From assembly GCA_002269645.1 (NCBI GenBank), contig NIVC01002013.1:149324-213323 (forward strand): a stretch of DNA of 64,000 nt, written 5' to 3'. Of this stretch, positions 4,326 through 26,300 are shown piece by piece (position 1 is the first letter of the stretch; each line of letters opens with the position of its first letter). The notes under the pieces are model-generated. The model did not search any database. It worked only from the letters and a program-made list of their open reading frames with translations, and was not told where the DNA came from. The translations under genes were made by a program, and so were the position numbers. Source of the DNA: Macrostomum lignano (taxonomy: Eukaryota).

Positions 4326-7112
4326 GAGACATGCGCATTCTAATGTAAGACGCCTGTGAAATTTGAAATTTTTAGGGAATAAAGGGAATAATGAGAAAGA
4401 ATATTTTAACCAAACTATTAAGTCCACTCGTGCATGCCCTCAATGCAGGTGACGCTACTTAAATACGAAAATACGCAAAATACTAATAAATATTAATCTG
4501 AACGTGTGTCTAGATCTCCAGACCTTAAGGGAATATGCACTACCTGGAATAGTGCATTATTCAATTATTCTTTTTGGCTTGTATATTATAGATAATACGA
4601 GTATATAGTATAGCTACTCGTATTTATGGTTCGTATATTCATAAGTCCGCGGGCCCAGCCCAGTTGCTAGGGTTCACCCAAGCGGAGCAGGGCTAGAAGG
4701 ATTCCCTCCACCATGCAGCCTCAGGCGCATGCCTGACTGACTGCATGACGTGGCGTGAGGCCCGCCAATATAAAAGTGGGGCATTGAAAATCGCCACAAT
4801 GCCAAATATTTTTTTAGAATAAGCCGCTGAGAAGCATCTTTGTGAGTCTGGGTCACGTTATCTACATCTTTGATGCGGAAATCTGTTGGAACTTTTAAAG
4901 AAAGTAAAGCTATTGTGTCGCGAGCTATTGTTGATAAAGGTAGTATTATCGCATCGTTCACTGTGCTCACTCAGTGTGATTCACTACATAGAGAGTGACT
5001 CATTCAGCGTGATTCACTATATGTAAGACTCTGTGTGAGACTCAGTTAGTGTGATTTTTCGTGTGTGATCCATCAGAGTGACTCATCGTGTGTGTGGTTC
5101 ACTCGGTGTGTGTTTATTAGGATGCAATCTACTCACTCACTCATTCACTCATAGTGTGACTCTCACTCAGCAAGATTGCAGCCCGGACAGCATCCCACGG
5201 CTCATCCAGTTCCTTCGGGTGACAAGACGAGCCATTGTCTTCCCCACGGAAGATCACGCTGCAGGACGGACCGGCGGACCACCCTGACCGGCCCCCATGC
5301 CTCTGCCTGTCTGCTGGCCTTCAGGGGCCGGCGGAATGGGCGACCCTCGCCTCCCCGCTGTGTCTACCGACCACCCTGCAGCTGAGTCAAGTAAGTCAGC
5401 AAGATTGACTGTGCGTGGCTCACTTAAGAAGCGCAACTTATTCTTTGTCAAATTGAGTTGCCCCTGGCCCTGTTTCACTCAATGTGACTCACAGAGAATG
5501 GTTAGTGAATTGATAAACGTCACGTGATTGCCATACTTCAGACCAGAAGTTCATTATAATGCCTCCAGAAATTCAGGAAGCTCCCTGTGTTCCTTTCTCT
5601 TATTTTCTTCTGGCAGGCACAGCAGACATGAGGGAAAACTGCCTGCAGGCTATGTGGACAAGAAATGAAAATTTGTTGGCAATCAGAGATTGGCCCCCGA
5701 GGGGAAATGGCTCTCTGCTATCGCTAATGAGGCTGCAGCAGACTTTAGCATCTCAATTTTTCAAGCTAGTATGAATTCATCATTCAATATTCTGTATTAT
5801 TTCTACAATAGTTTGATAACAAATACAGTTTACCAAATCTTTGTAGAATTCTCCGGTAGGCTAATCTCTATAAACTTACAGAAGCCGATCAAACAAGGTT
5901 TGTCAATCTTCAGCCTTTACTCTACGGAAATTCAAACTCAAAGGCAAACCGCCTCACACTCGAAAGCTCACTACAAACGATTTTAGGCCCATAATTGAGT
6001 GTAAAAGAATTAAACTAATAGACAATTATAGATAACTGACCTCAGTTCACGCAGTCTCTCCCTTCACAAAGCACTCAGATCGATGAATATATTATGAAAG
6101 CCAAAAAAGAAAGCTCATTGACCTAAAAAGAAAAACGAGGGAAGCGAAACAGGCTATGATTCTAGAGATATGTATTTTGAGCAGAAGTGCAACTTCGATC
6201 GTTCTGCGATGAAGATCTTTATCGGTACCAACTGTTACACATACTTGCAGTCTTCGGATGAGAATATACGATCGATATTGACGTATTTTGTTTATCATCA
6301 GGCTATTAAAGCATTACCACCTGTGTACAGGTACATCTCTAGCCATGTAAAATGGCTTGAGCTATAAGTGCTGCATGGAGCCAAATGCACTTATATCCAA
6401 CATCTATGCATGCATTGCAAAGATCGAAACAGCCAAGCTTTTATAGACACACGTCACACAATATTGCGTGTAGTTGCAGAACCTCACTCAAAACTGCAGT
6501 ACAGCAAGTTATTCTACATCCTTTTAGTTCCCTTTACCCAGACTCTCGGCCCATTAGCAGCAGCTGTGGCGCTGAACTCATCTTTTAACCGGACTCACGC
6601 GATTACGATCAATAAAAGGTAAACAGAAATTATGCTTCCTGCACGCGATGGTTATATTAAGTGATGGGTACAGATGCATATATATGACGTACACTAATAT
6701 CATCCACTTTAATTTAACTCCGCGTGTATATATTTCTTAATTAATTTTCCCAACTCGCTCATTCTAAACACAATTAATTGACATGTACTTAAAAAAACTA
6801 CTTACAGAACTCATGTATTGTAATTATTATTAATTTGTAAATCATGCTTCTGGCCTATATATACTCGTAAGGTCAAAGCTGCACATGTTTGTAAAGTTAT
6901 ATTATACTTCGATAACTTATAGGTGTAAGCATATAGCACGACTCCCGCCTCTCTACAAGAATGTTACGAGTACAAACCAAAGGATCACTGCACTAGGGCA
7001 TACATAATTACATTAATAGATCATCCATTACGTACTTGCCCTCATCCAGTGTAAAAGTGCGCTGTTGCTGTCACTTCAGGAGAGGACAATCACACATACA
7101 TGTAAGTATAAG

Positions 7113-7472
7113 CAGGCGCGTCGCCACCGGGGGGACAGGGGGGACATGTTCCCCCCTGTAAAAACTATGGGGGACATGCCAATGCTTTGTCCCCCCACCC
7201 CATCTTGTGACTCGTTGTGCTAATCAATAATTTTTCTTCAGGGCGCCAAAATATAGCGCTTTCGGCGCCAAAATGAGTGCCTGCGTCGCTAAAATGAGTG
7301 CCTGCGTCGCTATAAAAGGAATGCCTGCGGTGCCAAAGTGAGTGATTGCGGCGCCAAAATGAGCGCTGACAAACACGATTCTCAAAATAATGGAAATGTA
7401 AAAAATTTAGTCATGTACATGTTGAATTCTTGGCTTTGTCCCCCCACCATAAAATCCATGGCGACGCCCCTG
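7113..7472. mobile_element. hAT-type MITE
   Basis: TIRs caggcgcgtcgcca / tggcgacgcccctg and an 8-bp target duplication agtataag on both sides. CAGG termini with 8-bp TSD are typical of hAT. Confidence 0.85.
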
Positions 7473-8142
7473 AGTATAAGTCTTCAGGCCCCAGGCTTCA
7501 GGCACGTACTGATCCCGCGGAAAGGCCGGGATAGGGCGATAGCTACTTGAATAGGACGAAACGACGGCGCTTCGTCGACAGCTTGCTGGGTGATGCCCAG
7601 CAGCGCCCAAACTCTTGTTAAGCACTTAAACAGTAAGCCTTAAAAAAATAGTACTTTCAGCTCTTATAACCCTTTTAGATGTTTTAAGGTCTTATTCAGA
7701 GTGTTTAACGATTGTTTAACAATGTCTATTTTGGCGCAAATTTGAATATAACGAAGGAGGCCAAGAAATTTTTCCAAATACATGCCCTATTATATATTGG
7801 CTAAACAGGCTAATTGCCTGAGCCAAATTCTTACTACTACTGAAACCTCAAGCCAGCACAATCATCATGGCTCTAGCCTCTTTGTGGCAAGGCAAATTAA
7901 GAGAAGGCCTAGACAAGAGTAAGGCAAAGCCCACATGAAAATATGTCTATTAGGCCTACTAATATTAATACTACTACTAGGCCTAACTATTACTATTACT
8001 TATATCCTTATTTATTGGGCAAATATTTATTTTCTGGACCTAATTAATAATGGCAGGTAATATTAATAAATTCAGGCAAACGCATAGCATATCGTATATA
8101 TTATTTATTAGGCTAGGCCTAATTGTATTGTAGGGTAGGGCC

Positions 8143-9630
8143 CTGGGTTTTTTTGCCAGAGACAAGGTGCGAAATCGCACCTTGTGCCAAATTTTAAGGT
8201 GCGATTTTAAGGCTCAGAGTGCAATTTCTCTTGAGTCTTATTTCAGACAACTGGGAATGTATATTTTAATATCTTAGATAAGGCTATAGTATAGCCATAG
8301 GCTATATGGCATTCCTTCGGTTTACGATCATTTTTCCACCCACATTTCGGTTCACGATCCCCATGTAATTTTTCATATAAATGATCATAGCTTGCTTGAA
8401 ATAAACAAAAATTGTTAAACTGAGCTTATTCGTTACATTAGAAAGAACTGAACAGAATAGCCGACAAATGGTTTCTTCAATGGCATTGTGATGACGAGGA
8501 TCCTATATATCCACTTCGGTTCACGATCATTTACATGTATTTCTTCAATTTAAATGATCGTGAACTGAAGCTAAGGGGGGTGTCGAAGACATATGTAGTC
8601 ATATATTTATTTGTTGGCTTGTTGGCAATTGAAATGTCATCTTGAGTTAACGTGCGCTCCCAAGTAACTTGATGCTTTATTATTCTCTGCACGCTGCCAC
8701 CCCCCTCAGCTTCAGTTTATGATCATTTACATGTATTTCTTCAATTTAAATGATCGTGAACCGAAGCTAAGGGGGGGGGTGTCGAAGACATATGTAGTCA
8801 TATATTTATCAAGGACTACTTAAGAACACAGGACGTTACACTTGCAAATATTGGCAGAATTCTAAAAGGCCGCTTTGAATGCATGTGTCTATGGTTTTAG
8901 TGGCCTTTTTGCTTAGTTATTATTATTATTGCTTTATTATTCTCTGCACGCTGCCACCCCCCCTCAGCTTCGGTTTACAATCATTTACATGTATTTTTGC
9001 CATTTAAATGATCGTAAACCGAAGTGGATATATAGGATCGTCTTCATGGAACAGTTCTGAGACGTGAAATGGTACACTAAAACCCCCTACCTTCGGTTCA
9101 CGATCATTTACATGTATTTCTGCCATTTAAATGATCGTAAACCGAAGTGGATATATAGGATCCTCTGCATGGAACAGTTCTGAAATGAGTTCTATAATGA
9201 GCAACTCTTTCAATTTGATGAATGTATGCGAATGAACAGATCTCTTTGCATCGTTTCATTCTGGTTGGCATTCAATTGTTTGACAACAGAAAAATAAGAA
9301 GGCTTGGAGTGATTTCAGTGCTGGTTTAAAAAATGATTAAAAACACGAATTTCTTACTCTTGCATATCTTTCTTATGGGGATCGTCACCAATTTCAGGGA
9401 TCGTAAACCGAAGGAATGCCGGCTATATCGCCTATATGACTTAATAGGATTTAAAGAGTTATTTTGTTTCATATTTTAAGGCAGTGCATGAAAAATAGCT
9501 TAAGCATGGTTAAGCCTTTAAAGAAAAATGGTTATAAGACTGCACCTAAACCGCAACTACTTTTTTAATTTCAGGGTGCAATTTTAAAATTCAGGGTGCA
9601 TATGCACACTCTGCGCACAAAAAAACCCTG
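8143..9630. mobile_element. Non-autonomous hAT-like element
   Basis: TIRs ctgggtttttttg / caaaaaaaccctg and 8-bp TSD gtagggcc (8135-8142 and 9631-9638). Confidence 0.8.
8308..9420. mobile_element. Nested non-autonomous TIR element, superfamily uncertain (8-bp TSD, GG termini, possibly Merlin-like)
   Basis: Perfect 22-bp TIR ggcattccttcggtttacgatc, TSD ggctatat on both sides, and many internal cttcggttcacgatc copies in both orientations. Confidence 0.85.
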
Positions 9631-11143
9631 GTAGGGCCTATTGCATACATAAAGATAAAATTGTATTGCACCCTTTGCCTTTGACTTTGGCTTGGTCTAG
9701 AACATTTGTAATGGCCTAGGCCAATGCCTAGGCTAAATAAATATTGCTAGGCCTCCCTATGCTAAAAAATTATCATTATCATCAGACATCCAAATATAGT
9801 TTCATAGACATAATCTAGTTTTATTTTTTGATACACATAGTATATTTTGCAGCTATCTTTTTAATGTTTTAGGCTTAGTGCTTAGGCCCAGGGGGTTGAC
9901 AGCTATTTTATCTGCTATAAAAGTACAATTGTTGCCAGTTTGTCTAAACTACTTTTGTTTGCTAAAATACAATAAGTAATAATGATATAATATAGTCATT
10001 TTTTGCTATAAAATATTAAGTGACATTGTTATTGATATAAGGCCTAGTATTAATATGTTTATAATAATATAAGGCCAACTGTTCCTCTGGAGGAGAAAGG
10101 AGAAGAACTTCCATCACCAGAATTCCATTCTCTGAAATTAATCAGCTGAATCCCATGACCCAAATCCCATCATCCAACTTTTCTTCAAATTCATCAAAAT
10201 CCTCTCCATGAAACTAAACACCATCAAAATCCTTTATGCAAAATAGAAATCCTCTCCATGAAACTGAAGAATATCAAAATCCTCTCCACAAAACTAGACT
10301 CAATCAAAATTTTCTCTGTCAAAAAGAATCAACTCTCAGGATTCATTTGTTAGGTTTAGGGTTAGGATTAAGGTTGGAGCTGCATAGAGCTGCATGTTAA
10401 AAGGGCCCAATAAAAATTGAGCTAATTGAATCAATAGATTGAGCAATTTAATTCTTAGTCAGTCAGTATCAGTCTCAGTTAAAGTTTACAAAAAGATTGT
10501 GCAATCTAAATCAACCCTCTATTACATAACACCAACCCCCTTCCAATACGCAGTGGCAGATAGAAATTGAAACCCTGCCTAACTACTAGGAGGTTGGTTG
10601 AATGCCATTGAACCCCAAAATGAGTATAATCTGCAATAACATTAAAAGTATGGAAATTTTTTGTTGGATACTGTGCTTTTGGTTTTCATATTTTAAGTAA
10701 ACAACTTATATCCTCAAACTCAGTGTTGCAAGATCTTTTCACCAATATAAGTCTCTTTTCTCAAATTATATAAATAAAAGAGTAGTTAGTGTTTGAAATT
10801 TCCCTATTTTTATCATTTTAATATTGAGTGTATATGCTCTGCTTACTAAAGAGGCTCAAAAGTTGATGCATTGAATTTCAATGTCCAACAACTACACAGG
10901 GCTGCCTATTGAAAGGAAAAGTAAATAAATAGTAGCCATATCATTGCGCAATTATCTATACAGTCAGCTAGTGAGCCAGGGTTCAATTCATCAAAATAGC
11001 CTATTTGTTGCATACAAAAATTCTGCATTGATATATATAAGTCCTGCATTTGAGTTGCTAGCCATCTAGGAAGAGATATGCATTAAACCTGGTTGATTGA
11101 TTGATGATCAGTCTAAGAATTTTAAAAGTAGCATCTAATCTGA

Positions 11144-13023: not shown

Positions 13024-13556
13024 GTAGCATAGTATTGTAGCACTGTAGCTGAAACTTGAGTTTGGGTTGCTCTGCGTCAGTCAATGGACTTTTTATATCC
13101 CTGCACAAAAAACCTGGAAGCTTCCAGAAATTTCTGTTTAACCCAATAGAACTTTGCTTTTTAAAGTATATAAGAAATGATTTGTCTTAGCTCCCTAGAA
13201 AAAAATATAGTCATTCAATAATTCCAATCTTATTGGAATAAGTAACATTTGGTAGACATCATCTAGTATGCCTAGGAAAGTTGGTCTAGCTATGTATATG
13301 CACATGCATGGATGTATATCTATGATATAGAAATATCTGTGCATAGTGCTAGGGCAAAAGTGAATGTCACAAGCCTTGAGTGGGCTGAACGCTGAATTGC
13401 TGTTGTGAAGTTTCAAAAGACCCGAGGGCGGGATAGAGTGGCTTTGCAGGCTTAAGTTTTTCGACCCGAAAATTTGCAATACAAAAAGGGACGTAACTCG
13501 ACTAACAATTGATGCTTATAATAAACTAATCTAATAGCTCAAAATCATCATTGAGC

Positions 13557-16500
13557 ATGTTGGCAATTTCCAGTCGTCAAGGCCAACTAATTGGCCGATT
13601 TTTGTCTAGAAATGCGACAACTGCTCGCCACCTAGCTAGCGTGCCTAGTGCCAGTTTCAATGGCACCAATGGAAGCAGTCAGAGTCGAGGTCCTCAATGG
13701 GCTTCGAAAGTGGCACTTGTTAGCGGTGGATTCTTAGCTGGCTGCTGTCTGACAGTCTGGCAGTTGAGACGTCAGCGCAGCTTCAGCGAGGCTGCAGGCA
13801 GTGGCGTGGCTTTGGCTGCCAGCGCTAACAGGCCGACCCCGCCAACTAGCGTCAACCACATCGCCGATCTGGTGGAGCTGGTGTCTCCCACGGCAGTTAA
13901 CATCCGGGTAGAGGGCAGCACGGCGCTGCACTCAATGCTTGGCATGCCCAGCTCGCAGGGCTCCGGGTTTATTATACGCGAGGATGGCCTTATTTTAACT
14001 AATGCTCACGTGGCTGGAAGGTTTAAGGTGAGAACGGAGTAACCTGCTGTTGCTTGTTGGTTGGTTACCTGTGAATCTGTTATTCAAAGTCTAGGTGAAA
14101 TCTCTGTGTATGGGACACTATTGGCGCCATCTCTGACACTATTGACGCCATATTTGACACTATTGGCGCCATCTCTGACACTATCGACGCCATATTTGAT
14201 ACTATTGGCGCCATCTCTGACACTATTGGCGCCATCTCTGACACTATTAACGCCATATCTGACACTATTGGTGCCATCTCTGACACATTATTGGCGCCAT
14301 CTCTGACATTATTGGCGCCATCTCTGACACTATTGACGCCATCTTTGACACAATATTGGCGCTATCTCTGACACACTATTGGCGCCATCTTCGACACACT
14401 ACCAGCGCCAACTTTGACACACTACTGGCACCATCTCTGAGATAATTGGCACCAACTCTAACACACTATTGGCGCCATCTCTGGCACACTATTGGCGCCA
14501 TCTCTGACACGCTATCGACGCCATCTCTAATACACTGTCGGCGCCGCTATCTTTGACACACTATTGACGCCATCTCTGACAAACTATCGGCGCCATCTTT
14601 AACATAATCAGAGCAGTCTCTGAGACATAATCCGCGCCATCTCTGATACACTTTTGGTGCCATCTTCGACACACTACTGGCGCCTTCTTTGACACACTAC
14701 CGGCGCCAACTCTGAGGTAATCGGCGCTATCTCTAACACACTATTGGTGCCATCTCTGGCACACTATTGGCGCCATCTCTGACACTATTGGCGCCATCTC
14801 TGATACTATTGGCGCCATCTCTGACACTATTGGTGCCATCTCTGACACTATTGGCGCCATATCTGACACTATTGGTGCCATCTCTGACACATTATTGTTA
14901 GCATATCTGACACTATTAACGCCATCTTTGACACACTATTGGCGCCATCTTCGACACACTACTGGTGCCTTCTTTGACACACTACTGGCGCCATCTCTGA
15001 GATAATCGGCGCCATCTCTAACACACTATTGGCGCCATCTCTGGCACACTATTGGCGCCATATCTGACACGCTTTCGGCGCCATCTCTAATACACTATCG
15101 GCGCCGCTATCTTTGACACACTATTGGCGCCATCTCTGACAAACTGTCGGCGCCATCTTTAAGATAATCGGAGCAATCTCTGACACGCGATTGGCGTCAT
15201 CTCTGAGACAATCAGCGCCACTTTTATCTAATATATCGGTGATAATATCGGCGCTATTTTCTATCTTTCCAGATCTAGTACAGAAAGTCTAGTAGTGTTA
15301 CTATAAAAAAGTACTTTATTACCATTATCAACGCAGGGCAGCCTGGTTGTCACCCTAACAGACGGTCGCGAGCTGCCCGCAGAGCTGATAGCCATAGACG
15401 CTGAGAGCGACATGGCTCTAGTGAAGGTGTCGGCTCGCGACCTTCCCGTGCTACCGTTGGGCCAGTCGAAGCGCTGCCGAGCTGGCGAATGGGTCATCGC
15501 GATTGGCTCTCCGCTGACCCTCAGCAACACGGTCACGGTTGGTATTCTCAGCAATACAGCCAGAAATTTGGGCACCGGTAGCAATATTGAGTATCTGCAA
15601 ACTGATGCCGCCATCACGTTTGGCAATTCTGGCGGGCCATTGGTGGATATGCATGGCCAGGTGAGCCCGGTATTTTTATTATTGCCTGTTTAACACCTGT
15701 TAGACAGAAGCTATACCTGTTAGACATAAGCTATACTTGTTAGACAGAAGCTATACCTGTTAGACATAAGCTATACTTGTTAGACAGAAGCTATACCTGT
15801 TAGACATAAGCTATACTTGTTAGACAGAAGCTATACCTGTTAGACAGAAGCTATACTTGTTAGACATAAGCTATACCTGTTAGATAGAAGCTATACCTGT
15901 TAGACAGAAGCTATACTTGTTAGACAGAAGCTATACTTGTTAGACAGAAGCTATACATGTTAGATAGAAGCTATACCTGTTAGACAGAAGCTATACTTGT
16001 TAGACAGAAGCTATACATGTTAGACAGAAGCTATACTTGTTAGACAGAAGCTATACATGTTAGACAGGAGCTATACATGTTAGACAGAAGCTATACTTGT
16101 TAGACAGAAGCCTCACCTGTTAGACAGAAGCTATACTTGTTAGACAGAAGCCTCACCTGTTAGACAGAAGCTATACTTGTTAGACAGAAGCCTCACCTGT
16201 TAGACAGAAGCCTCACCTGTTAGACAGAAGCCTTTTCTGCTAGGCAGAAGCCTCACCTGTTAGACGGAAGCTTTACCTGTTAGACAGGAGCCTCACCTGT
16301 TAGACGGTAACTTTACCTGTTAGACAGGAACCTCCCCTGTTAGACAGAAGCCTCACCTGTTAGGCAGAAGCCTCACCTGTTAGACAGAAGCCTTATCTGC
16401 TAGGCAGAAGCCTCACCTGTTAGACAGAAGCCTCACCTGTTAGACGGAAGCCTCACCTGTTAGACGGAAGCTTTACCTGTTAGACAGGAACCTCACCTGT

Positions 16501-17048
16501 TAGACAAACCCTCAACTGTTAGACAAAACCCTCAACTGTTAGACGGAAGCTTTATCTATAAGACAGAAGCCTCACCTGTTAGACACAATTTCCGCGCACT
16601 TTTACTGCAGGCGATCGGCATCAACACGCTGAAAGCGGACGCTGGCATCAGCTTCGCCATTCCCATCGACGAGGCGAAGAATTTCGTAGACCAGGCCCTG
16701 TCCACCTCTCGCCAAGTGATCAGCCGGCCAAAGGCCTACCTGGGCCTCACGCTGCTGTCGCTCAACCCCACCATCGCCAGGCGGGTCTTCGGTCGCGATG
16801 GCATTGACAAAGGCGTCCTGGTGCACTCGGTTCACCCGGACTCGCCAGCTCAGCGGGCCGGCCTGGCCAGTTATGACGTCATTCTGACTGCGGACGGCGA
16901 GCCGGTTCGTCGGGTGTCCGATCTGCACCGCGCTGTTGCCAAGGCAACGCAAAGAGGCGGTGGTAAATCTGTGACTGTTCGATTGCTGGTGCTGCGGTCT
17001 GGGCGCGAGCTTCAGCTGGATGTGCAGCCAGAACTGCAGGGCGGATGA
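13557..17048 (+). CDS. HTRA2: Mitochondrial HtrA2/Omi-type serine protease with PDZ domain; exons 13557-14027, 15337-15660, 16611-17048
   Basis: Arg/Ser-rich N-terminus, TM segment, catalytic triad NAHV / DMALV / GNSGGP, AIGINT..GISFAIP and a C-terminal PDZ. Both GT-AG introns are phase 0 and join in frame. Confidence 0.95.
14115..15230. repeat. Degenerate minisatellite of about 21-23 bp in HtrA2 intron 1
   Basis: Core tattggcgccatctctgacac with higher-order variants. Confidence 0.95.
15690..16590. repeat. 20-bp minisatellite filling HtrA2 intron 2
   Basis: Unit ctgttagacagaagctatac grades into ctgttagacagaagcctcac toward the right. Confidence 0.95.
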
Positions 17049-17529
17049 GTGGCTGGTGACTATGGCCAGGTTTAAAGCCATTGAGGAAATATTGAGTATC
17101 AGCTTCTGCCTGTCTTTACTGTGTCTTTGTGCCTGTGTGTCTGCCTGTGTGTCTGCCTGTCTGTCTGCTCTGTCTGTCTGCTCTGTCTGTTAGTTTTCCT
17201 GCTGCAAATCTTTCAGAAGCTAAAGGATGCGAAAGAAGAGCTAGACAGGCTTATCCTGCGATTTAGTGTGTTAATATGGCTAGTAGACCTGCCGTCTTTG
17301 ATGCTTAGTTGAATAAAATGCAAGTATTGACTCCCAGCATCGCCTATTATTAGTTAATAAATAATTGTAATTAATTTTTTGCGCTCATAGTTTAATGTGT
17401 AGATATAATAAAAAGTTACTTGCTTAGAGACCGTGAGAGACACTGCATATTTCTAATGTCTTCGTTTGAAATTTCAATTTCATTAAATAGTTCATACTTT
17501 TAGTAGTCAATGCAAATCAGGGACTTATT

Positions 17530-18825
17530 AGCAAATCCCAGATCCTCATAATTCAGCTATTCAAATCCCAGATCCTCATAATTCAGCCATTCAAATCCCA
17601 GATTCTCATAATTCAGCCATTCAAATCCCAGATCCTCATAATTCAGCTATTCAAATCCCAGATCCCCATAATTCAGCTATTCAAATCCCAGATCCTCATA
17701 ATTCAGCCATTCAAATCCCAGATCCTCATAATTCAGCTATTGAAATCCCAGACCCTCATAATTTAGCTATTCAAATCCCAGATATTCATAATTCAGCTAT
17801 TCAAATCCCAGATCCTCATAATTCAGCTATTGAAATCCCAGACCCTCATAATTTAGCTATTCAAATCCCAGATATTCATAATTTAGCTATTCAAATCCCA
17901 GATCCTCATAATTCAGCTATTTAAATCCCAGATATTCATAATTTAGCTATTCAAATCCCAGATTCTCATAATTCAGCTATTTAAATCCCAGATCCTCATA
18001 ATTTAGCTATTCAAATCCCAGATCCCCATAATTCAGCTATTCAAATCCCAGATCCCCATAATTCAACTATTCAAATCCCAGATCCCCATAATTCAGCTAT
18101 TTAAATCCCAGATTCTCATAATTCAGCTATTCAAATCCCAGATCCCCATAATTCAGCTATTTAAATCCCAGATTCTCATAATTCAGCTATTCAAATCCCA
18201 GATCCTCATAATTCAACTATTCAAATCCCAGATCCCCATAATTCAACTATTCAAATCCCAGATCCCCATAATTCAGCTATTCAAATCCCAGATCCCCATA
18301 ATTCAGCTATTCGAATCCCAGATCCCCATAATTCAGCTATTCAAATCCCAGATCGCCATAATTCAGCTATTCAAATCCCAGATCGCCATAATTCAGCTAT
18401 TCAAATCCCAGATCCCCATAATTCAGCTATTCAAATCCCAGATCCTCATAATTCAGCTATTGAAATCCCAGATCCTCATAATTTAGCTATTCAAATCCCA
18501 GATCCTCATAATTTAGCTATTCAAATCCCAGATTCTCATAATTCAGCTATTCAAATCCCAGATCCTCATAATTCAGCTATTCAAATCCCAGATCCTCATA
18601 ATTTAGCTATTCAAATCCCAGATCCTCATAATTTAGCTATTCAAATCCCAGATTCTCATAATTCAGCTATTCAAATCCCAGATCCTCATAATTCAGCTAT
18701 TCAAATCCCAGATCCCCATAATTCAGCTATTTACGCTCGTAAGTCCCAGATCCTCATAACTCAGCTATTCAAATCCCAGATCCCACAATTCAGCCATTCA
18801 AATCCCAGATCCTCATAATTCAGCT
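17530..18825. repeat. 30-bp minisatellite between HtrA2 and MESD
   Basis: Unit aaatcccagatcctcataattcagctattc, about 43 copies. Confidence 0.97.
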
Positions 18826-18848
18826 GAACTCCCAATTCCCCTTTCCAG

Positions 18849-19409
18849 GCGACTGCAGCTGTCCGGTCTCTGCTGCTCCTGTGCCTGCTGCTCCCAGCCA
18901 GCAGCTCGGCCGAGCAGAAGAAGCCGCTGTCCGAGTACTCTGACGCAGACTTGGAGCGACTCTACAAGCAGTGGGAAGAAAGCGATCCGGACTCGGAGCC
19001 CGAGAGCACGAGCTGGAAGAGTCCACAGTTGGATCTGACCAAGGTGCCGGATTTGACAGATCCCACACTAATCCTGCAGCACTCCAGCCGTGGCCAGCCG
19101 GTGCCTCTGATTGTCCGCATCGCTGGAGCCGAGGGTCGCGACTCCGTATGGCTGGAGAATCTGTCGCGCAACTGGCAGCTGGAGATGTTCAACGCTCACA
19201 TGGAGACAACTAGGCGAGTTGTAGAAGACGGCACGGTGCAACTGATCGCTCTTGATGGCTCTCAGGTGGTGAAAGTGCGCGAATATTTGCTAGCCCAGCC
19301 TAACTGTTATTCTGTCACTATCGAGGGTCACACTGTACTCGGTAGGGGCGCTCCAGCTGCTGAAGTGGCCGCTGCCGCCGCTGCTAAAGCCAAAAATACT
19401 GAACTATGA
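18849..19409 (+). CDS. MESD: LRP5/6 chaperone MESD; coding exon begins at a splice acceptor and has no ATG of its own
   Basis: After the acceptor ccctttccag: ATAAVRSLLLLCLLLPASSSA (signal peptide), KKPLSEYSDADLERLYKQWEE (compare human DYNDADMARLLEQWE), WQLEMFNAH, DGSQ and C-terminal NTEL (KDEL-like). AATAAA near 19479. Confidence 0.92.
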   Translation, partial: ATAAVRSLLLLCLLLPASSSAEQKKPLSEYSDADLERLYKQWEESDPDSEPESTSWKSPQLDLTKVPDLTDPTLILQHSSRGQPVPLIVRIAGAEGRDSVWLENLSRNWQLEMFNAHMETTRRVVEDGTVQLIALDGSQVVKVREYLLAQPNCYSVTIEGHTVLGRGAPAAEVAAAAAAKAKNTEL

Positions 19410-19619
19410 ACAGTAGTATAGTAGTGTTAACTTTGTATTTTTTTAAAAATGATTTCAACTTATTTTGTTATGTACACAATAAATTGTCTGCTTCAATCAA
19501 TGTTTTAAATTACATGTAAATTCATTGTGCGATAACATTTTTTTGTGTGATTTCCTTGTTCAAACTTTATAATATAGTAAATGTTTTTTTCAACAATATA
19601 AAGTACATTCAGGTCTGTC

Positions 19620-20329: not shown

Positions 20330-23300
20330 CTATTGAATCATCTTTTTTGGCTCCTTCAGGTTCTGTAAAGCTCAGGGTTTGCGATAGAGAGAGACAGTAG
20401 TTTAACTTGGCCTTGGCTTTACTTTATTGTACAGCACTATCTTCTTGTCTGCATAGCGGCTGCGGGAGGGTCGCTGCTGTTGCTGTTGCTGCTGCTGGAG
20501 CCGCTTGATTTCTGCCAACTGTTTGGGCGACAGTTTGGCCTCCCGTTCGGCGACACGCTGTGCCACCGATTCCGTCAGCTCTTTGAGCTCCGGAAAGTCG
20601 TCGAGATTGTCGATTAGCGGGATCAGCAGTGGCTCGATGCTTGGGTGCTTGCTGGCTGGAATTGGGCGATGCAGGTGAATTGAGACTGCATTCTTGATGG
20701 GCCGAGTGATAGACGGGAATGTACACTCGATTGGGATAGAGAGGCTGTATGTACATTCTTGATAGGCGGAGTGGTGATAGTGAGACTGTACACTCGATTG
20801 GGATAGAGAGGCTGTATGTACATTCTTGATAGGTGGAGTGGTGATAGTGAGACTGTACACTCGATTGGGATAGAGAGGCTGTATGTACATTCTTGATAGG
20901 TGGAGTGGTGATAGTGAGACTGTACACTCGATTGGGATAGAGAGGCTGTATGTACATTCTTGATAGGTGGAGTGGTGATAGTGAGACTGTACACTCGATT
21001 GGGATAGAGAGGCTGTATGTACATTCTTGATAGGTGGAGTGGTGATAGTGAGACTGTACACTCGATTGGGATAGAGAGGCTGTATGTACATTCTTGATAG
21101 GCGGAGTGGTGATAGTGAGACTGTACACTCGATTGGGATAGAGAGGCTGTATGTACATTCTTGATAGGTGGAGTGGTGATAGTGAGACTGTACACTCGAT
21201 TGGGATAGAGAGGCTGTATGTACATTCTTGATAGGTGGAGTGGTGATAGTGAGACTGTACACTCGATTGGGATAGAGAGGCTGTATGTACATTCTTGATA
21301 GGTGGAGTGGTGATAGTGAGACTGTACACTCGATTGGGATAGAGAGGCTGTATGTACATTCTTGATAGGCGGAGTGGTGATAGTGAGACTGTACACTCGA
21401 TTGGGATAGAGAGGCTGTATGTACATTCTTGATAGGCGGAGTGGTAGAGGGGATTGTAATATTCCTGCACGAAAACGAGACGCACGAGTTTGCGTGTAGG
21501 AAAATCATTGTCTTTTGACCATAGACAAAGTCATTACTGCACGGTTTTCGAGAAACGTTAAGAAGAGATGAAAATTGAGTGGAGAGTTTATAGAAAAGTG
21601 TATAAAGCTTATTGACTATGGCGTCTGTAATCGACTCGGCTCTGAATCCTCCATTAATTGATTTTCGCTATGCTACGGTGTCTGGATTAATTGGCGACGA
21701 AATGTTTATTGAAAGTGTGTCCAGCAACTTTGAGAGGACGGGCGACGATTTGACTCCACTGATAGCGGATTGCACGTTCAGCGAGGAATTAGAGAAACTT
21801 TTCAGCTCGGATCCGGAAACCTTGTGTAACCTTGACGAATTGGAAAGTCTGGCCGCTCAACTGGAACGCGACAACGAATGTCATTCGACTGTCTCTAAGG
21901 ATAAAGCTGTGATCAACCGCTTGACGGCCTGGTTGGCGGAGAATAATTTAAAAGTGGATTACGCGACTGCTTCGGTGGAAGAAATTGCCAAATGGGTCCG
22001 CTACTTCTATGCGACTCTGCGTAAGTCAGACGGCAGCTTCTATTCGCCGAATACAATCGTAGGAATTCGAGCCGCACTGTTCAGGTACTTTATGAAATTA
22101 CCTGACCTCAATATCATCGCTCACGAGGCTTTTCATAGCGCGAATTTGATGGTGAAGAATGTTTGCAATGCGTATTTGAAGTCCGGTGGTCGAGTGCAGC
22201 ATTACGAAGCCATTGAGTCGGACGACCTTTTCAAGCTTGCTTCTTACTTCGACAGAAGCACTCCAACACGTTTGCAAGAAGAGGTATATTTCAATGTGTT
22301 ATTTTATTTCGGCAATCGCGGCAGAGAATGGCTACGAGGTCTCACTGTTCGTTCATTCCGAGAGAAGGCCCCATCAAACGGAGCTATGGCGATCGAGTTG
22401 CAAGGCAGCACCTCAAAGCTTTATTTGTCGAAAATTACTGCCGTGCCGGGTTGGAATCAGGAGGACTTCTTTCTGCGTCCGAAACCACGAGTGAATGCGG
22501 ATGGCATCTGGTACACCAAAGTACCAGTTGGAATCAACACTTTGGGGCCGTTGCTCAAGAAGATCTCTTCGAATGCTAACCTGTCCAAGCTGTACACTCC
22601 GCATTGTGTGCGACCTACAGTTGTTACGGAGCTGCATGAAGCTGGCTTTTCTGTCGAAAAAATTGCGAAGGTGACAGGTCACAAGGTGAGCAATTCTTTA
22701 TTCTTAGTAAGTTTATTGACACATGGACAAGGAATTTATTAAACACCACCTCTATTCACAGAATAGCGCGTCGGTAGAACGATACATCCGGAGAGGCAAG
22801 AAGAGGGACTCGATCATGGCAGGGATGAGTGATCAGCTGACAGTCGCTCTAGCTGGAACTATGCCGGCACCAAGTTCTACATTGAGCGAAGCTCCTGCAA
22901 GGGCTGTTACAACTACCGACCCGTGCGCCCTGAGCGACGCTCCTACAAGGGCTGTTGCGACTACCGACCCGTGCGGATCAGCGTCAATGTCAACTGTCAA
23001 GAAGTCACTGGTTGTTGAAGAATCGACCACCACACTTTTAGCAGCCCCCACTAAGCGGATGAAGATTTTGGCAAACGGCAAAACGAATGTTGTGCAGTTT
23101 ATTTTCGAGTAAATGCCGAGAGGGGTGTGAGTAGGTCTATAGACTCATTAACTGTTTCCCTAGTTCCACTTATTATCCTTTTTGTTCTTCCATATTGTTA
23201 TTGATTACATATTCAGTTGCTTCTAAAAAAAAATTGTTAAATCGTGCAGGAATGAAGTCATTCCTGCACGATAAGCTAACGTATGTCAAGTGATTTCTAC

Positions 23301-26300
23301 CATAGACACAGACATTCCTGCACGATAATAAATCGAAAAAAATCATTCCTGCACGCTGTGGTCAAACGACAATGTACACTCGATTGGGATAGAAAGGCTG
23401 TATGTACATTCTTGATAGGCGGAGTGATAGAGGGGATTGTACACTCGATTGGGATAGAAAGGCTGTATGTACATTCTTGATAGGCGGAGTGATAGAGGGG
23501 ATTGTACACTCGATTGGGATAGAAAGGCTGTATGTACATTCTTGATAGGCGGAGTGATAGAGGGGATTGTACACTCGATTGGGATAGAAAGGCTGTATGT
23601 ACATTCTTGATAGGCGGAGTGGTGATTGTGAGACTGTATACTCGATTGGGATAGAGAGGCTGTATGTACATTCTCGATAGGTGGAGTGGTAGATATCTCT
23701 AGGCGGAGTGGTAAATATCTCTAGGCGAGATATGTACACTGTAGTACATGTAGGAGGATAATTAAAAACTTTAAGGAACAAAATACAGTGTACATTGTTT
23801 CTATCGATGCAGGCAGTGGTGAGCACTATAGGGTTCTGATGCTCTCGGTTCTAGGAAATATTGATTTTTTATTCTTATCAATTCGAATGAGATCATTCTT
23901 TGATTAAGCGTTTAAGACTTCCGGGAGTGAACTAAAATTAATCAATCTATGAAAGCTTTTGAACTCCCACCCTTCCTACCTTAGGTACATTAGTTTAAAT
24001 GAAATTAAAAGATACAAAATACTATAGTTATCCAATAAACCTAATTGGAATTGAAAAAAACATTAGAAGCGCTTTTCACTGTAAAGACTTTTATAATACA
24101 AATGATATTCCTGTTGTTGAGTAGTTAATCAGATATATTAAGGAATTTTCCATTTTACTGTACGACCTCCTCTTGTAAGCAATTTAATCAAATCAGAAGT
24201 TAATCCGGCTTTACGTTGAAGAACAATTTGGAAATTAAAATAACTGCGTCTTGCAATAAAGCGTGATAGCAGTTCAAAATGTATTCGAGTGCACTGCAGA
24301 CAGTCATTTTAACACATTTCTCATTCACAGATTTAGACCTTATCTACAGATTTCACATCTACAGATTTCTTATCTGCAGATTTCTCATTCACACATTTCT
24401 CATCTACAGATTTCTCATCTACAGATTTCTCATTCACACATTTCTCATCTACAGATTTCTCATTCACACATTTCTCATCTACAGATTTCTCTCCCAGAGA
24501 TTTGCAATCCCTGCTCACCTTGCAATTTGCACAGAACGACAACATCCCGACTGCCAATCTGATCCGATAGCGATTCGTGATCCTGCAGCTCGGGCAGCTT
24601 GAGCAGTTGGCCACCCACTGTGCTGAGCTCGATGACAGCTGGAATAGGAAAGTTTTTATACATTTTTAGTATGTAGCCAGGCTCTTAAAATTGTGGAAAT
24701 CCTAGATATTTTTATTGTGAAATGCCTGACAGGAAGCTTAGCAAGTTTCAGTGGGAGATTTTTTCCAATCTGACAAATAGTTCGCAGCAGGAGGCAAAAA
24801 AACACGATTACAGCATTTTTCCCATGAACTTATCTCAACAGAATTTTTTCACGCTTGTAGCTGCTACAATCACATGTAAGCAATACAGACAACTCATCAT
24901 CTGTTCGCTGCGTACGAGTACTCGTATACGCAGTAGTGTTATATTTCCACCGAGTTCCTCCGGGAGAACTGTAGCATCCAGCTAGCTAGCTGGTTATGAC
25001 ACCAACACTGCCAACCAACATGCTTGACCTGTCACTACACGTATTGGAAATTTCACCCTACGTCAGTTGCTTACCCGGCTAAAAATAAATAGAATTGAGG
25101 CTTTTTAACGAAACAGATGAGTGAACAGCAAAACCTCAGCAAAATGTTTTTACAGGGCACAAAAGATCTGCTTTGACTCTTTGGACTTTTAATGTATTGA
25201 AAACTAAAAGGGTTACGCAGGATTCTGTTGAGGCACGCAGGGGTCGGAAAAAAGATTGTGGGGAGAGCCAATCAAAGCCACGTACTTTGCACGCAGAGGA
25301 CGGAAAACAGGAGGTTAGCGAGAGCCAATCAAAAGCCACACATTTCACACGCAGAGGGACGGAAAACAGGTTGCGGGGAGAGCCAACCAAAAGCCACGTA
25401 CTTCGCACGCAGGGGATGGAAAACACGGGGTTGGTGAGTGAGAGCCAACCAAAAGCCACGTTACTTCGCACGCAGGGGATGGAAAACACGGGGTTGGTGA
25501 GTGAGAGCCAACCAAAAGCCACGCACTTTGCACGCAGGGGACGGAAAACAGGAGGTTAGCGAGAGCCAATCAAAAGCCACACATTTCACACGCAGAGGGA
25601 CGGAAAACAGGTTGCGGGGAGAGCCAACCAAAAGCCACGTACTTCGCACGCAGGGGATGGAAAACACGGGGTTGGTGAGTGAGAGCCAACCAAAAGCTAC
25701 GCACTTCGCACGCAGGGGATGGAAAACACGGGGTTGGTGAGTGAGAGCCAACCAAAAGCCACGCACTTCGCCCGCAGGGGATGGAAAACACGGGGTTGGT
25801 GAGTGAGAGCCAACCAAAAGCCACACACTTCGCACGCAGAGGGACGGAAAACACGGGGTTGATGAGTGAGAGCCAACCAAAAGCCACGTACTTCGCACGC
25901 AGGGGACGTAAAACAGGGGGTTGGTGAGTGAGAGCCAACCAAAAGCCACGCACTTCGCACGCAGGGGACGGAAAACAGGGTGTTAGCGAGAGCCAACCAA
26001 AAAGCCACGTTACTTCGCACGCAGGGGATGGAAAACAGGGGGTTGGTAAGTGAGAGCCAACCAAAAGCCGCGTACTTCGCACGCAGGGGACGGAAAACAG
26101 GGGGTTGGTGAGTGAGAGCCAACCAAAAGCCACGTACTTCGCACGCAGGGGACGGAAAACAGGGGGTTGGTAAGTGAGAGCCAACCAAAAGCCACGTACT
26201 TCGCACGCAGGGGATGGAAAACACGGGGTTGGTGAGTGAGAGCCAACCAAAAGCCACACACTTCGCACTTAGGGGGTGGGGCGGAAAACAGGGGGACAGA

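What the first reader, a model, noticed from the sequence alone, without database searches (positions are those of the whole stretch)
17048..18900. MESD has no start codon: probable spliced-leader-supplied AUG and possible HtrA2-MESD operon
Seen: the signal-peptide frame starts right after a strong acceptor (ccctttccag|GCG at 18849). There is an in-frame TGA at 18825 and no ATG before the signal peptide. I found no ATG with a phase-0 donor between the HtrA2 poly(A) signals (about 17310-17360) and the 30-bp array. Known: flatworm spliced leaders end in AUG, which can act as the initiator, and SL-resolved operons are reported in flatworms including Macrostomum. Inference: SL+GCG gives MATAAVRSLLLLCLLLP, a clean signal peptide, and the two same-strand genes may be co-transcribed across a 1.3-kb minisatellite spacer.
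Basis: partly seen in the sequence, partly recalled or inferred. Interest (0 to 1): 0.7.

Follow-up and report, generated by a model that had tools for sequence, protein, structure and literature searches.

The report
Flatworm MESD gene borrows its start codon
This Macrostomum lignano chaperone gene (MESD) has no start codon of its own and almost certainly takes its AUG from the spliced leader added by trans-splicing, probably as the second gene of a two-gene operon; this mechanism is well known in flatworms, so the case is real but ordinary.

Summary
The window is the last 64 kb of Macrostomum lignano contig NIVC01002013.1. A single-exon MESD/Boca gene (18849-19409) starts directly after a strong acceptor (cccctttccag|GCG). 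An in-frame TGA lies 24 nt upstream. The next in-frame ATG is codon 113.

The acceptor matches the published M. lignano SL acceptor motif YTNCAG. It has the best pyrimidine tract in the 1.8-kb spacer. The M. lignano spliced leader ends in ATG. Joining it gives MATAAVRSLLLLCLLLPASSSA|EQ, a normal signal peptide, and homology to mouse MESD begins right after it.

Three paralogous copies share this structure. Their differences are 7 synonymous and 2 non-synonymous, so the frame is under selection. GenBank marks the two annotated copies as 5'-partial with no upstream exon.

In both annotated paralogous loci, HtrA2 and MESD carry one transcriptional-unit prefix (Mlig011032g1/g2 and Mlig032997g1/g2), whereas the next same-strand gene has a different prefix. 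That supports co-transcription.

I could not obtain SL-junction reads, so the trans-splice itself is inferred. SL-AUG initiation is long established in flatworms and is noted for Macrostomum, so this is a new member of a known kind and of low interest. I put SL-supplied AUG at about 0.85 and the operon at about 0.6.

The parts
13517..13525 (+). TATA-like box (TATAATAAA) 40 nt upstream of the HtrA2 ATG; the probable promoter of the transcription unit
   Evidence: Sequence. The 9-mer occurs only 3 times on the + strand of the window. Promoter function is inferred, not shown.
13557..14027 (+). HtrA2/Omi exon 1 (CDS from its own ATG; mitochondrial-type presequence; GTGAG donor, phase 0)
   Evidence: The spliced translation reproduces PAA61622.1 (BOX15_Mlig008974g1) exactly.
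15337..15660 (+). HtrA2 exon 2 (GTGAG donor, phase 0)
   Evidence: It contains the GNSGGPL serine-protease motif.
16611..17048 (+). HtrA2 exon 3 (PDZ region), stop TGA at 17046-17048
   Evidence: Pfam Trypsin_2 and PDZ are on record for the product.
17312..17412 (+). HtrA2 3'-end region with three AATAAA signals (17312, 17356, 17407). The last overlaps a second TATAATAAA motif at 17404-17412.
   Evidence: The region is conserved in both paralogs, except that 17407 reads AATGAA there.
17532..18825 (+). 30-bp minisatellite, 42.9 copies. It fills the spacer, contains no ATG, and is closed in the MESD frame.
   Evidence: Its length varies among paralogs: about 17 copies in L001, and 24 copies plus a Ty3-type insertion in L002.
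18825..18827 (+). In-frame TGA, 8 codons upstream of the exon
18828..18848 (+). Pyrimidine tract and 3' splice acceptor (actcccaattcccctttccag|). TTCCAG matches the SL acceptor motif YTNCAG. Proposed SL trans-splice site.
   Evidence: It has the highest pyrimidine content (0.87) of all AGs in the spacer and is one of only two YTNCAG sites there. The motif is from PMC8629364. The sequence is identical in all three paralogs.
18849..18911 (+). Signal-peptide coding part of MESD: (SL-Met)+ATAAVRSLLLLCLLLPASSSA, predicted cleavage ASSSA|EQ
   Evidence: The 9-mer SLLLLCLLL has a mean Kyte-Doolittle score of 3.14. The alignment to mouse MESD 2KGL begins at residue 21.
18849..19409 (+). MESD/Boca (LDLR chaperone) single coding exon: 186 codons plus TGA, no genomic start codon, C-terminal KNTEL
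   Evidence: 99% identical to PAA60838.1 with PF10185 on record. PDB MESD 2kgl E=8e-19. 35% identical to Plakobranchus MESD. dN/dS about 0.095 among paralogs.
18853..18858 (+). Second YTNCAG (CTGCAG|), 10 nt inside the exon: a possible competing acceptor. SL-AUG would be out of frame there and give a 60-aa product.
19478..19483 (+). AATAAA, the likely MESD poly(A) signal
   Evidence: The paralogs have AATGAA here.

Best explanation
MESD (window 18849-19409) is an SL trans-spliced gene of Macrostomum lignano whose initiator AUG is not in the genome.

Proposed mechanism:
1. The 35-nt spliced leader (...TTATTGCATG) is joined to the acceptor cccctttccag|GCG.
2. The last three SL bases then become codon 1. 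The mRNA reads AUG GCG ACU..., that is MATAAVRSLLLLCLLLPASSSA|EQKK.
3. This gives a cleavable signal peptide that takes the chaperone into the ER, where the C-terminal xTEL motif would retain it.
4. The pre-mRNA most likely starts at the HtrA2 promoter (TATA-like box at 13517) and reads through the HtrA2 poly(A) region and the 1.3-kb minisatellite.
5. HtrA2 (capped, with its own ATG) and MESD (SL-capped, with the SL AUG) would then form a two-gene operon resolved by 3'-end formation plus trans-splicing.

Shown here: the sequence anatomy, species identity, MESD homology, selection on the frame, the lack of any usable genomic ATG, and the shared transcriptional-unit name in two paralogous loci.

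Inferred: the SL junction itself, use of the SL AUG by ribosomes, and read-through transcription at this particular locus.

My probabilities are about 0.85 for the SL-supplied AUG and about 0.6 for a true dicistronic unit with HtrA2.
For: Species and locus: the window equals NIVC01002013.1:149324-213323 over the 23,489 bases compared.

Gene identity:
- MESD is 99% identical to PAA60838.1 and PAA56096.1, both labelled 'partial'.
- It carries Pfam PF10185 and matches the mouse MESD structure at E=8e-19, starting at residue 21.

No genomic start:
- An in-frame TGA lies 24 nt upstream.
- The spacer has 8 ATGs, none with a credible phase-0 donor.
- The first in-frame ATG is codon 113, after an out-of-frame ATG.

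Acceptor: TTCCAG| fits YTNCAG, the top motif at 21,754 SL sites in M. lignano. It has the best pyrimidine tract in the spacer.

Spliced leader: CGGTCTCTTACTGCGAAGACTCAATTTATTGCATG has a single ATG at its 3' end. SL+exon translates to a canonical signal peptide.

The frame is functional: 9 variable sites among 3 paralogs, 7 synonymous and 2 non-synonymous, dN/dS about 0.095, binomial P=1.3e-3.

RNA-seq-derived gene models of both annotated paralogs start inside this exon, 21 and 24 nt after the acceptor, with no upstream exon. The HtrA2 models are similarly clipped 3-6 nt past their ATG, so model 5' ends run short.

Operon:
- HtrA2 and MESD are BOX15_Mlig011032g1/g2 and Mlig032997g1/g2.
- In that annotation, the prefix names a cluster of assembled transcriptional units. 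TBONE cuts these into genes using SL and poly(A) evidence.
- The next same-strand gene has an unrelated prefix (Mlig005367g11/g13), so sharing a prefix is not mere adjacency.
- The repeat-adjusted distance from the HtrA2 3' end to the acceptor is about 0.2 kb. The published operon threshold is 1 kb and the mode is about 100 bp.

Literature: the flatworm SL AUG works as an initiator (Cheng et al. 2006, cited in PMC12582326, PMC9851317, PMC5832876 and PMC7653826). In Echinococcus granulosus, 143 of 187 SL-bearing clusters were predicted full length when the SL ATG was taken as the putative start codon, although nearby alternative AUGs mean not all need it (PMC3510090). Macrostomum authors note that the SL's final ATG is a start codon (PMC10468722).
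Against: - No read, EST or cDNA showing SL joined at 18849 was available. The protein database holds no M-ATAAV... form.
- MESD is not annotated at all at this locus in GenBank.
- The annotated paralog CDSs start 21-24 nt inside the exon rather than at the acceptor. This fits a clipped model end but is not explained in detail.
- The shared transcriptional unit could be an assembly bridge through repeats. The array, and in L002 a sense-oriented Ty3-type element, may attract reads from elsewhere.
- Three AATAAA signals and a TATAATAAA motif (17404) lie between the genes, so an independent promoter with an outron is possible.
- The three copies are only 1-4% diverged, so conservation of the acceptor says little.
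- A second YTNCAG 10 nt downstream could compete and would give an out-of-frame product.
Confidence: 0.8

Rival explanations
1. MESD is SL trans-spliced and uses the SL AUG, but it is monocistronic. A promoter of its own in the unique 170 nt between the HtrA2 poly(A) signals and the array (TATAATAAA at 17404) would make a pre-mRNA whose roughly 1.4-kb outron is mostly the minisatellite. HtrA2 would then be only a neighbour.
For: TATAATAAA occurs only 3 times on the + strand of 64 kb. One copy sits 40 nt before the HtrA2 ATG and another at 17404. About 60% of SL trans-spliced M. lignano genes are not in operons. Transcriptional units can be mis-joined or split at repeats.
Against: In both paralogs the motif reads TATAATGAA. 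It also overlaps an AATAAA, so it may simply be a third HtrA2 poly(A) signal. HtrA2 and MESD share a transcriptional-unit prefix at two loci, while the next gene does not. The repeat-adjusted spacing of about 0.2 kb is typical of operons.
Confidence: 0.3
2. A cis-spliced upstream exon supplies the ATG. It could be a small unannotated exon (for example ATGCAA|GTATTG at 17318). It could also be HtrA2 exon 1 or 2, whose GTGAG donors are both phase 0 and so in frame with the MESD acceptor, which would give a fusion protein.
For: The phase-0 ATG..GT candidates are listed. HtrA2 exon 1 (471 nt from the ATG) and exon 2 (324 nt) both end in phase 0 with consensus donors.
Against: The only spacer candidates have non-consensus donors (GTATT, GTGTC, GTCTG, GTCTT against GTRAG) and lie inside the HtrA2 3' UTR. 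RNA-seq-based models at two loci show no upstream exon and keep HtrA2 and MESD as separate genes. An HtrA2-MESD fusion would put a mitochondrial presequence in front of an ER signal peptide, which makes no sense for an ER chaperone with an xTEL tail.
Confidence: 0.05
3. MESD has an ordinary capped transcription start just upstream of or within the exon, and translation starts at a non-AUG codon, for example one of the in-frame CUG Leu codons of the signal peptide.
For: The annotated 5' ends of the paralog models fall at CTG codons 21-24 nt inside the exon. Four in-frame CTGs lie in codons 8-14 of the exon.
Against: The two paralog models start at different CTGs although their sequence is identical. 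The HtrA2 models are clipped in the same way, just past a real ATG, so these ends look like coverage artefacts. The CUG contexts are poor. A scanning ribosome would first meet the out-of-frame AUG at 19148. The strong in-frame acceptor would be left unexplained.
Confidence: 0.04
4. The start-less MESD copies are non-functional (pseudogenes or assembly artefacts), and the real MESD lies elsewhere.
For: There is no genomic ATG, and this copy is absent from the GenBank annotation.
Against: Three independently assembled paralogs keep a full open frame with 7 synonymous and 2 non-synonymous differences. No other M. lignano MESD was found among 5.8 billion protein clusters. There is no SL remnant or poly(A) tract that would mark a retrocopy.
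Confidence: 0.02

Closest known systems
[quoted passage not shown]
   Same: The SL ends in AUG. The acceptor sits directly at the first sense codon. The SL AUG is in frame with a conserved ORF that has no other usable AUG, and it restores a full-length N-terminus.
   Different: Here it is inferred from the genome and the annotation, not shown by cDNA or translation assays. The species is free-living (Macrostomorpha) and the gene (MESD) is not listed in the papers I could read.
SL-resolved operons of Macrostomum lignano (Wudarski et al. 2017, PMC5730564; Ustyantsev & Berezikov 2021, PMC8629364)
   Same: Two same-strand genes, with the first not trans-spliced and the second behind a YTNCAG acceptor. 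The intergenic distance is inflated by repeats but is about 0.2 kb after subtracting them. The genes are functionally unrelated. The g1/g2 names come from one transcriptional unit in two paralogs.
   Different: At this locus the downstream gene is missing from the GenBank annotation, and the raw spacer (1.8 kb; 5.8 kb in one paralog) is long. The precursor RNA was not seen here.
Caenorhabditis elegans operons (SL2 trans-splicing of downstream genes)
   Same: Polycistronic pre-mRNA in which 3'-end formation of the upstream gene is coupled to trans-splicing of the downstream gene. The modal spacing is about 100 bp (discussion in PMC8629364).
   Different: M. lignano has one SL, not a dedicated SL2. 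Nematode SLs do not end in AUG and do not supply the start codon in this way.
MESD / Boca family of ER chaperones for LDL-receptor-family beta-propeller/EGF modules (PF10185; PDB 2KGL, 3OFE-3OFH)
   Same: The domain matches (E=8e-19 to mouse MESD). The architecture is N-terminal signal peptide, conserved YSDADxERL...WEE segment, core domain and C-terminal ER-retrieval-type tail.
   Different: The tail is KNTEL in this copy (KKTEL in the paralogs, GKTEL in a mollusc) rather than the mammalian REDL type. Codon 1 is not encoded at the locus.

Membership tests
mRNAs that take their initiator AUG from the flatworm spliced leader | The organism has an SL RNA whose leader ends in AUG | tested here: met
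   The window is M. lignano. The published 35-nt SL ends in ATG and has no other ATG. The SL gene itself is not in the window.
mRNAs that take their initiator AUG from the flatworm spliced leader | A 3' splice acceptor at the 5' end of the coding exon, with no matching cis donor upstream | tested here: met
   The YTNCAG acceptor at 18843-18848 has the best pyrimidine tract in the spacer. No ATG-bearing phase-0 donor of consensus type lies in the spacer. The paralog gene models have no upstream exon.
mRNAs that take their initiator AUG from the flatworm spliced leader | The SL AUG is in frame with the conserved ORF, and no other AUG can give the full-length N-terminus | tested here: met
   SL+exon gives MATAAVRSLLLLCLLLPASSSA|EQ. 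The next in-frame ATG is codon 113. An in-frame TGA lies 24 nt upstream.
mRNAs that take their initiator AUG from the flatworm spliced leader | The SL-exon junction is observed in RNA | not testable with these tools
   No M. lignano reads or transcripts are reachable. No M-ATAAV protein is in the collection. No supplementary gene lists are held.
mRNAs that take their initiator AUG from the flatworm spliced leader | Translation starts at the SL AUG | not testable with these tools
   This needs initiation-site ribosome profiling or a reporter. The mature protein loses the signal peptide, so ordinary N-terminal proteomics will not show it.
M. lignano SL-resolved operon (criteria of Ustyantsev & Berezikov 2021) | Adjacent genes on the same strand with none on the opposite strand between them | tested here: met
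   HtrA2 is 13557-17048 (+) and MESD is 18849-19409 (+). Only repeats lie between them.
M. lignano SL-resolved operon (criteria of Ustyantsev & Berezikov 2021) | Repeat-adjusted intergenic distance below 1 kb | tested here: met
   About 1,470-1,515 nt from the HtrA2 3' end to the acceptor, minus the 1,294-nt array, leaves about 0.2 kb.
M. lignano SL-resolved operon (criteria of Ustyantsev & Berezikov 2021) | The downstream gene is SL trans-spliced | tested here: inconclusive
   This is inferred from the motif, the frame and the missing ATG. No junction read was seen.
M. lignano SL-resolved operon (criteria of Ustyantsev & Berezikov 2021) | One precursor transcript spans both genes | tested here: inconclusive
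   The paralogs share a prefix (Mlig011032g1/g2, Mlig032997g1/g2), while the neighbouring gene is Mlig005367g11/g13. At this locus only Mlig008974g1 is annotated. Bridging through repeats cannot be excluded.
MESD/Boca chaperone family (PF10185) | Mesd domain | tested here: met
   PF10185 is on record for the 99%-identical PAA60838.1. PDB 2kgl scores 8e-19 and Boca 3off 1.6e-7.
MESD/Boca chaperone family (PF10185) | N-terminal signal peptide and C-terminal ER-retrieval motif | tested here: inconclusive
   The signal-peptide-like segment is present but is complete only with an added Met. The tail is KNTEL here and KKTEL in the paralogs. Function of the xTEL tail was not tested.

The most novel reading that the evidence does not exclude
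All three copies of the only detectable MESD gene in M. lignano lack a genomic start codon. If so, production of a chaperone needed for LRP5/6-type receptors (Wnt signalling) depends entirely on SL trans-splicing. The HtrA2-MESD unit would also stay co-transcribed across spacers of 1.0, 1.8 and 5.8 kb, the last holding a young sense-oriented Ty3-type retrotransposon with identical LTRs. The three paralogs would then form a natural series for measuring how much repeat and transposon load a flatworm operon spacer tolerates before the downstream gene fails.
Probability: 0.3. Interest if true: 0.4.

Novelty: new member of a known kind. Interest (0 to 1): 0.2.

Why it matters
The main value is for annotation.
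- Genes that take codon 1 from the spliced leader are written as 'partial' or dropped. MESD is missing from the GenBank annotation of this locus, and its two paralogs are labelled partial.
- SL-aware gene calling would fix this class of error in Macrostomum and other flatworms.

Biologically, this is a clean example of a conserved, selected gene with no fallback start codon, so trans-splicing is obligatory for making the protein. It also shows that a flatworm operon spacer can be mostly minisatellite.

None of this changes current understanding. SL-AUG initiation and SL-resolved operons are both established.

Tried and rejected
- Looked for the SL or an SL RNA gene in the window: none within 3 mismatches, and no Rfam family anywhere in the 64 kb.
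- Looked for a protein beginning M-ATAAV, or any transcript-derived MESD, in the 15-billion-protein collection. It holds only the two partial GenBank entries.
I rebuilt the spliced protein by enumerating GT..AG introns instead, and the exact look-up then worked.
- Searched supplements of four M. lignano papers for Mlig011032, Mlig032997, Mlig008974 and MESD. Nothing was held. Cheng et al. 2006 is not held either, so I cite it through papers that describe it.
- Scanned every YTNCAG in the window for long ATG-less frames as a chance baseline. The result was uninformative, because minisatellites with open frames dominate it.
- Tried to explain the 21-24-nt offset of annotated CDS starts by sampling more M. 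lignano loci. Too few annotated genes per locus to conclude anything.
- Considered the minisatellite as a functional element. Rejected, because about 30 similar arrays occur in the window, including in both HtrA2 introns.
- Considered a retrogene origin. Rejected, because there is no SL remnant upstream of the exon.
Full report
WHAT THE WINDOW IS. The MESD-like frame is 99% identical to two GenBank proteins of Macrostomum lignano, PAA60838.1 and PAA56096.1. Both are labelled 'partial' and both carry Pfam PF10185. Fetching the contig of a third HtrA2 copy (PAA61622.1, BOX15_Mlig008974g1) showed that the window matches NIVC01002013.1 of assembly GCA_002269645.1 (Mlig_3_7) at 23,489 of 23,489 compared bases. 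Window position = record position minus 149,323, so the window is the last 64 kb of that contig. M. lignano is a free-living flatworm of the Macrostomorpha.

THE OBSERVATION. All the sequence facts hold.
- HtrA2 stops at 17046-17048.
- AATAAA signals lie at 17312, 17356 and 17407.
- The 30-bp array (42.9 copies) runs 17532-18825.
- An in-frame TGA sits at 18825-18827.
- The acceptor is actcccaattcccctttccag|GCG, with the exon starting at 18849.
- The frame then runs 186 codons to TGA at 19407-19409.
- The 1,800 nt between the HtrA2 stop and the acceptor hold 8 ATGs, all upstream of the array.
- Inside the exon, the first in-frame ATG is codon 113 (19185), and an out-of-frame ATG at 19148 comes first.
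- A ribosome scanning a purely genomic transcript could therefore not make MESD.

IS IT A REAL, SELECTED GENE? The protein aligns to mouse MESD (PDB 2KGL, E=8e-19), to Drosophila Boca, and to a mollusc MESD at 35% identity. The alignment to the solved mature protein begins at residue 21, exactly where the hydrophobic N-terminal segment ends (ASSSA|EQKK).

The genome has three colinear paralogous segments: the window, L001 on NIVC01002104.1 and L002 on NIVC01002664.1. All three have the same acceptor and a full open frame. Across the 558-nt coding sequence there are 9 variable sites, 7 synonymous and 2 non-synonymous. That gives dN/dS of about 0.095 and a binomial P of 1.3e-3 against neutrality. 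The frame is therefore translated and constrained, and the pseudogene reading is very unlikely. No other M. lignano MESD turned up.

WHERE DOES THE AUG COME FROM? The published M. lignano spliced leader is CGGTCTCTTACTGCGAAGACTCAATTTATTGCATG. About 30% of genes receive it (PMC8629364). The top motif at its 21,754 acceptor sites is [T/C]TNCAG, placed right at the junction.

The MESD acceptor reads TTCCAG|. It is one of only two YTNCAG sites in the spacer. The other lies in the HtrA2 3' UTR, upstream of the poly(A) signals. Among all AGs in the spacer, the MESD acceptor has the highest pyrimidine content, 0.87. The SL has a single ATG, its last three bases. Joined at 18849, the message reads MATAAVRSLLLLCLLLPASSSAEQKK..., with a charged n-region, a hydrophobic core (Kyte-Doolittle 3.14) and a small-residue cleavage site. 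The chance of an in-frame YTNCAG in the eight codon positions between the stop and the signal peptide is roughly 0.02 at the window's own motif density.

ALTERNATIVES FOR THE START.
- Cis exon in the spacer. The only phase-0 ATG..GT combinations have non-consensus donors and lie in the HtrA2 3' UTR. The least bad, ATGCAA|GTATTG at 17318, sits on the first poly(A) signal.
- HtrA2 exons as donors. I rebuilt the HtrA2 exons (13557-14027, 15337-15660, 16611-17048). Both GTGAG donors are phase 0, so splicing from them into the MESD acceptor would be in frame. The product would place a mitochondrial presequence ahead of an ER signal peptide. The published models also keep the genes separate.
- Own capped start plus CUG initiation. 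The RNA-seq-based CDSs of the two annotated paralogs start 24 and 21 nt inside the exon, at different CTG codons of an identical sequence. The three HtrA2 CDSs likewise start 3-6 nt past a perfectly good ATG. These model ends look clipped rather than biological.
- Competing acceptor. A second YTNCAG (CTGCAG|) lies 10 nt inside the exon. It would put the SL AUG out of frame and give a 60-aa product.

OPERON OR NEIGHBOUR? Wudarski et al. 2017 assembled 'transcriptional units' from RNA-seq and named them by clusters of at least 95% identity. Their TBONE pipeline cut these units into genes using SL-read peaks and poly(A) reads (PMC5730564). The suffix gN numbers the genes from a cluster. For example, Mlig020950.g1 and .g2 are two loci of one gene (PMC5816591).

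By exact look-up of the rebuilt spliced protein, HtrA2 is BOX15_Mlig011032g1 next to MESD Mlig011032g2. At the other locus they are Mlig032997g1 and Mlig032997g2. Two unrelated genes can share a prefix only if they were cut from one assembled unit.

As a control, the next same-strand gene about 2 kb downstream is Mlig005367g11 at one locus and Mlig005367g13 at the other. Many dispersed copies share that prefix. Adjacency alone therefore does not give a common prefix.

Ustyantsev & Berezikov define an operon as same-strand neighbours with an SL-spliced downstream gene and a repeat-adjusted distance under 1 kb. They note that repeats inflate operon spacers, and that 18% of operons start with a non-trans-spliced gene. 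Here the repeat-adjusted distance is about 0.2 kb. HtrA2 has its own TATA-like box (13517) and its own ATG.

Caveats:
- At this locus only Mlig008974g1 is in GenBank, and MESD is unannotated. Possibly its model overlapped repeat annotation and was filtered out.
- Assembled units can be bridged through repeats.
- A TATAATAAA motif at 17404 leaves room for an internal promoter with a minisatellite outron. In both paralogs that motif reads TATAATGAA.

I put the operon at about 0.6. The monocistronic but still SL-dependent alternative is about 0.3.

THE SPACER. The minisatellite is background. The window has about 30 arrays, and both HtrA2 introns are mostly arrays. The stop-to-acceptor interval differs among paralogs: 1,044 nt in L001, 1,800 nt in the window and 5,791 nt in L002. 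In L002 a Ty3/gypsy-type LTR element is inserted in sense orientation into the array. Its pol ORF matches Ty3 at E=2e-58, and its 127-nt LTRs are 100% identical. I read only its ends and searched its pol ORF as a single piece.

COMPARISON WITH WHAT IS KNOWN. Use of the flatworm SL's terminal AUG as initiator was shown by Cheng et al. 2006 and is repeated as a general feature in later work. In Echinococcus granulosus, 143 of 187 SL-bearing clusters were predicted full length when the SL ATG was taken as the putative start codon. The authors caution that nearby alternative AUGs mean not all of them need it. The Macrostomum genome papers note that the SL ends in a start codon and that this complicates annotation. 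SL-resolved operons in M. lignano are also published.

The present case meets every membership feature I could test: an SL ending in AUG, an acceptor without a cis donor, and an in-frame SL AUG with no alternative. The two features that need RNA or ribosome data were not testable. It is a new member of a known kind.

VERDICT. The practical lesson concerns annotation: a conserved gene is missing at this locus and marked 'partial' at its paralogs, because codon 1 is not in the genome. Interest is 0.2.

Noticed in passing
window 18849-19409 (NIVC01002013.1:168172-168732): This MESD copy is absent from the GenBank annotation of the contig. Only HtrA2 (Mlig008974g1) and a minus-strand Il2rg-like gene are called nearby, although the two paralogous loci have MESD annotated as 'partial'.
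   Followed up: partly
window 19395-19397; L001 and L002 equivalents: One of the two non-synonymous differences among paralogs hits the C-terminal ER-retrieval-like tail: KNTEL in the window copy against KKTEL in both paralogs (a mollusc MESD ends GKTEL). It might weaken ER retention of this copy's product.
   Followed up: no
L002 1233-1235 (paralog of window 13557-13559): In the NIVC01002664.1 paralog the HtrA2 start codon ATG is CTG. No in-frame ATG or acceptor lies in the 10 open codons upstream, so that HtrA2 copy may be start-less or decaying.
   Followed up: partly
L002 about 5400-9899: A Ty3/gypsy-type LTR retrotransposon is inserted in sense orientation inside the 30-bp array between HtrA2 and MESD. 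It has a 1,095-aa pol ORF (E=2e-58 to Ty3), 127-nt LTRs that are 100% identical, and apparent 5-bp target duplication CAAAT, so the insertion looks recent. HtrA2 and MESD still share a transcriptional-unit name there.
   Followed up: partly
window 14115-15210, 15695-16585 and about 28 other sites: The window is very rich in minisatellites: about 30 arrays with periods of 4-67 bp. Both HtrA2 introns consist largely of arrays (23 bp x 49 and 20 bp x 45).
   Followed up: no
window 13517, 17404, 56671 (+ strand): TATAATAAA occurs only three times on the + strand. One copy is 40 nt before the HtrA2 ATG and one is in the unique spacer upstream of the array. The latter could be an internal promoter or just a third poly(A) signal.
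   Followed up: partly
window 14027/14028 and 15660/15661 against 18848/18849: Both HtrA2 splice donors are phase 0 with consensus GTGAG, and the MESD acceptor is phase 0. Exon skipping into MESD would therefore be in frame and give an HtrA2-N-terminus::MESD fusion. This is probably coincidence.
   Followed up: partly
window about 21612-23112 (+): A degenerate copy of a multi-copy gene with DUF3504 and phage-integrase-like domains (ZMYM2-like/QRICH1 C-terminal; family Mlig005367, at least 12 dispersed copies). Compared with the intact paralogs it has a deletion of about 100 bp and a broken frame. It is probably a transposon-derived family.
   Followed up: partly
L001 10001, L002 10001, L001 6016, L002 1236, L003 10001: GenBank CDS starts of M. 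lignano models here are clipped: 21-24 nt inside the MESD exon, and 3-6 nt past the HtrA2 ATG. The 5' ends of these models seem to run short by 15-25 nt, for reasons I could not establish.
   Followed up: partly
window 60117 (+): A 192-codon open frame without any ATG starts directly after another YTNCAG acceptor. It could be an internal exon or another SL-dependent start.
   Followed up: no
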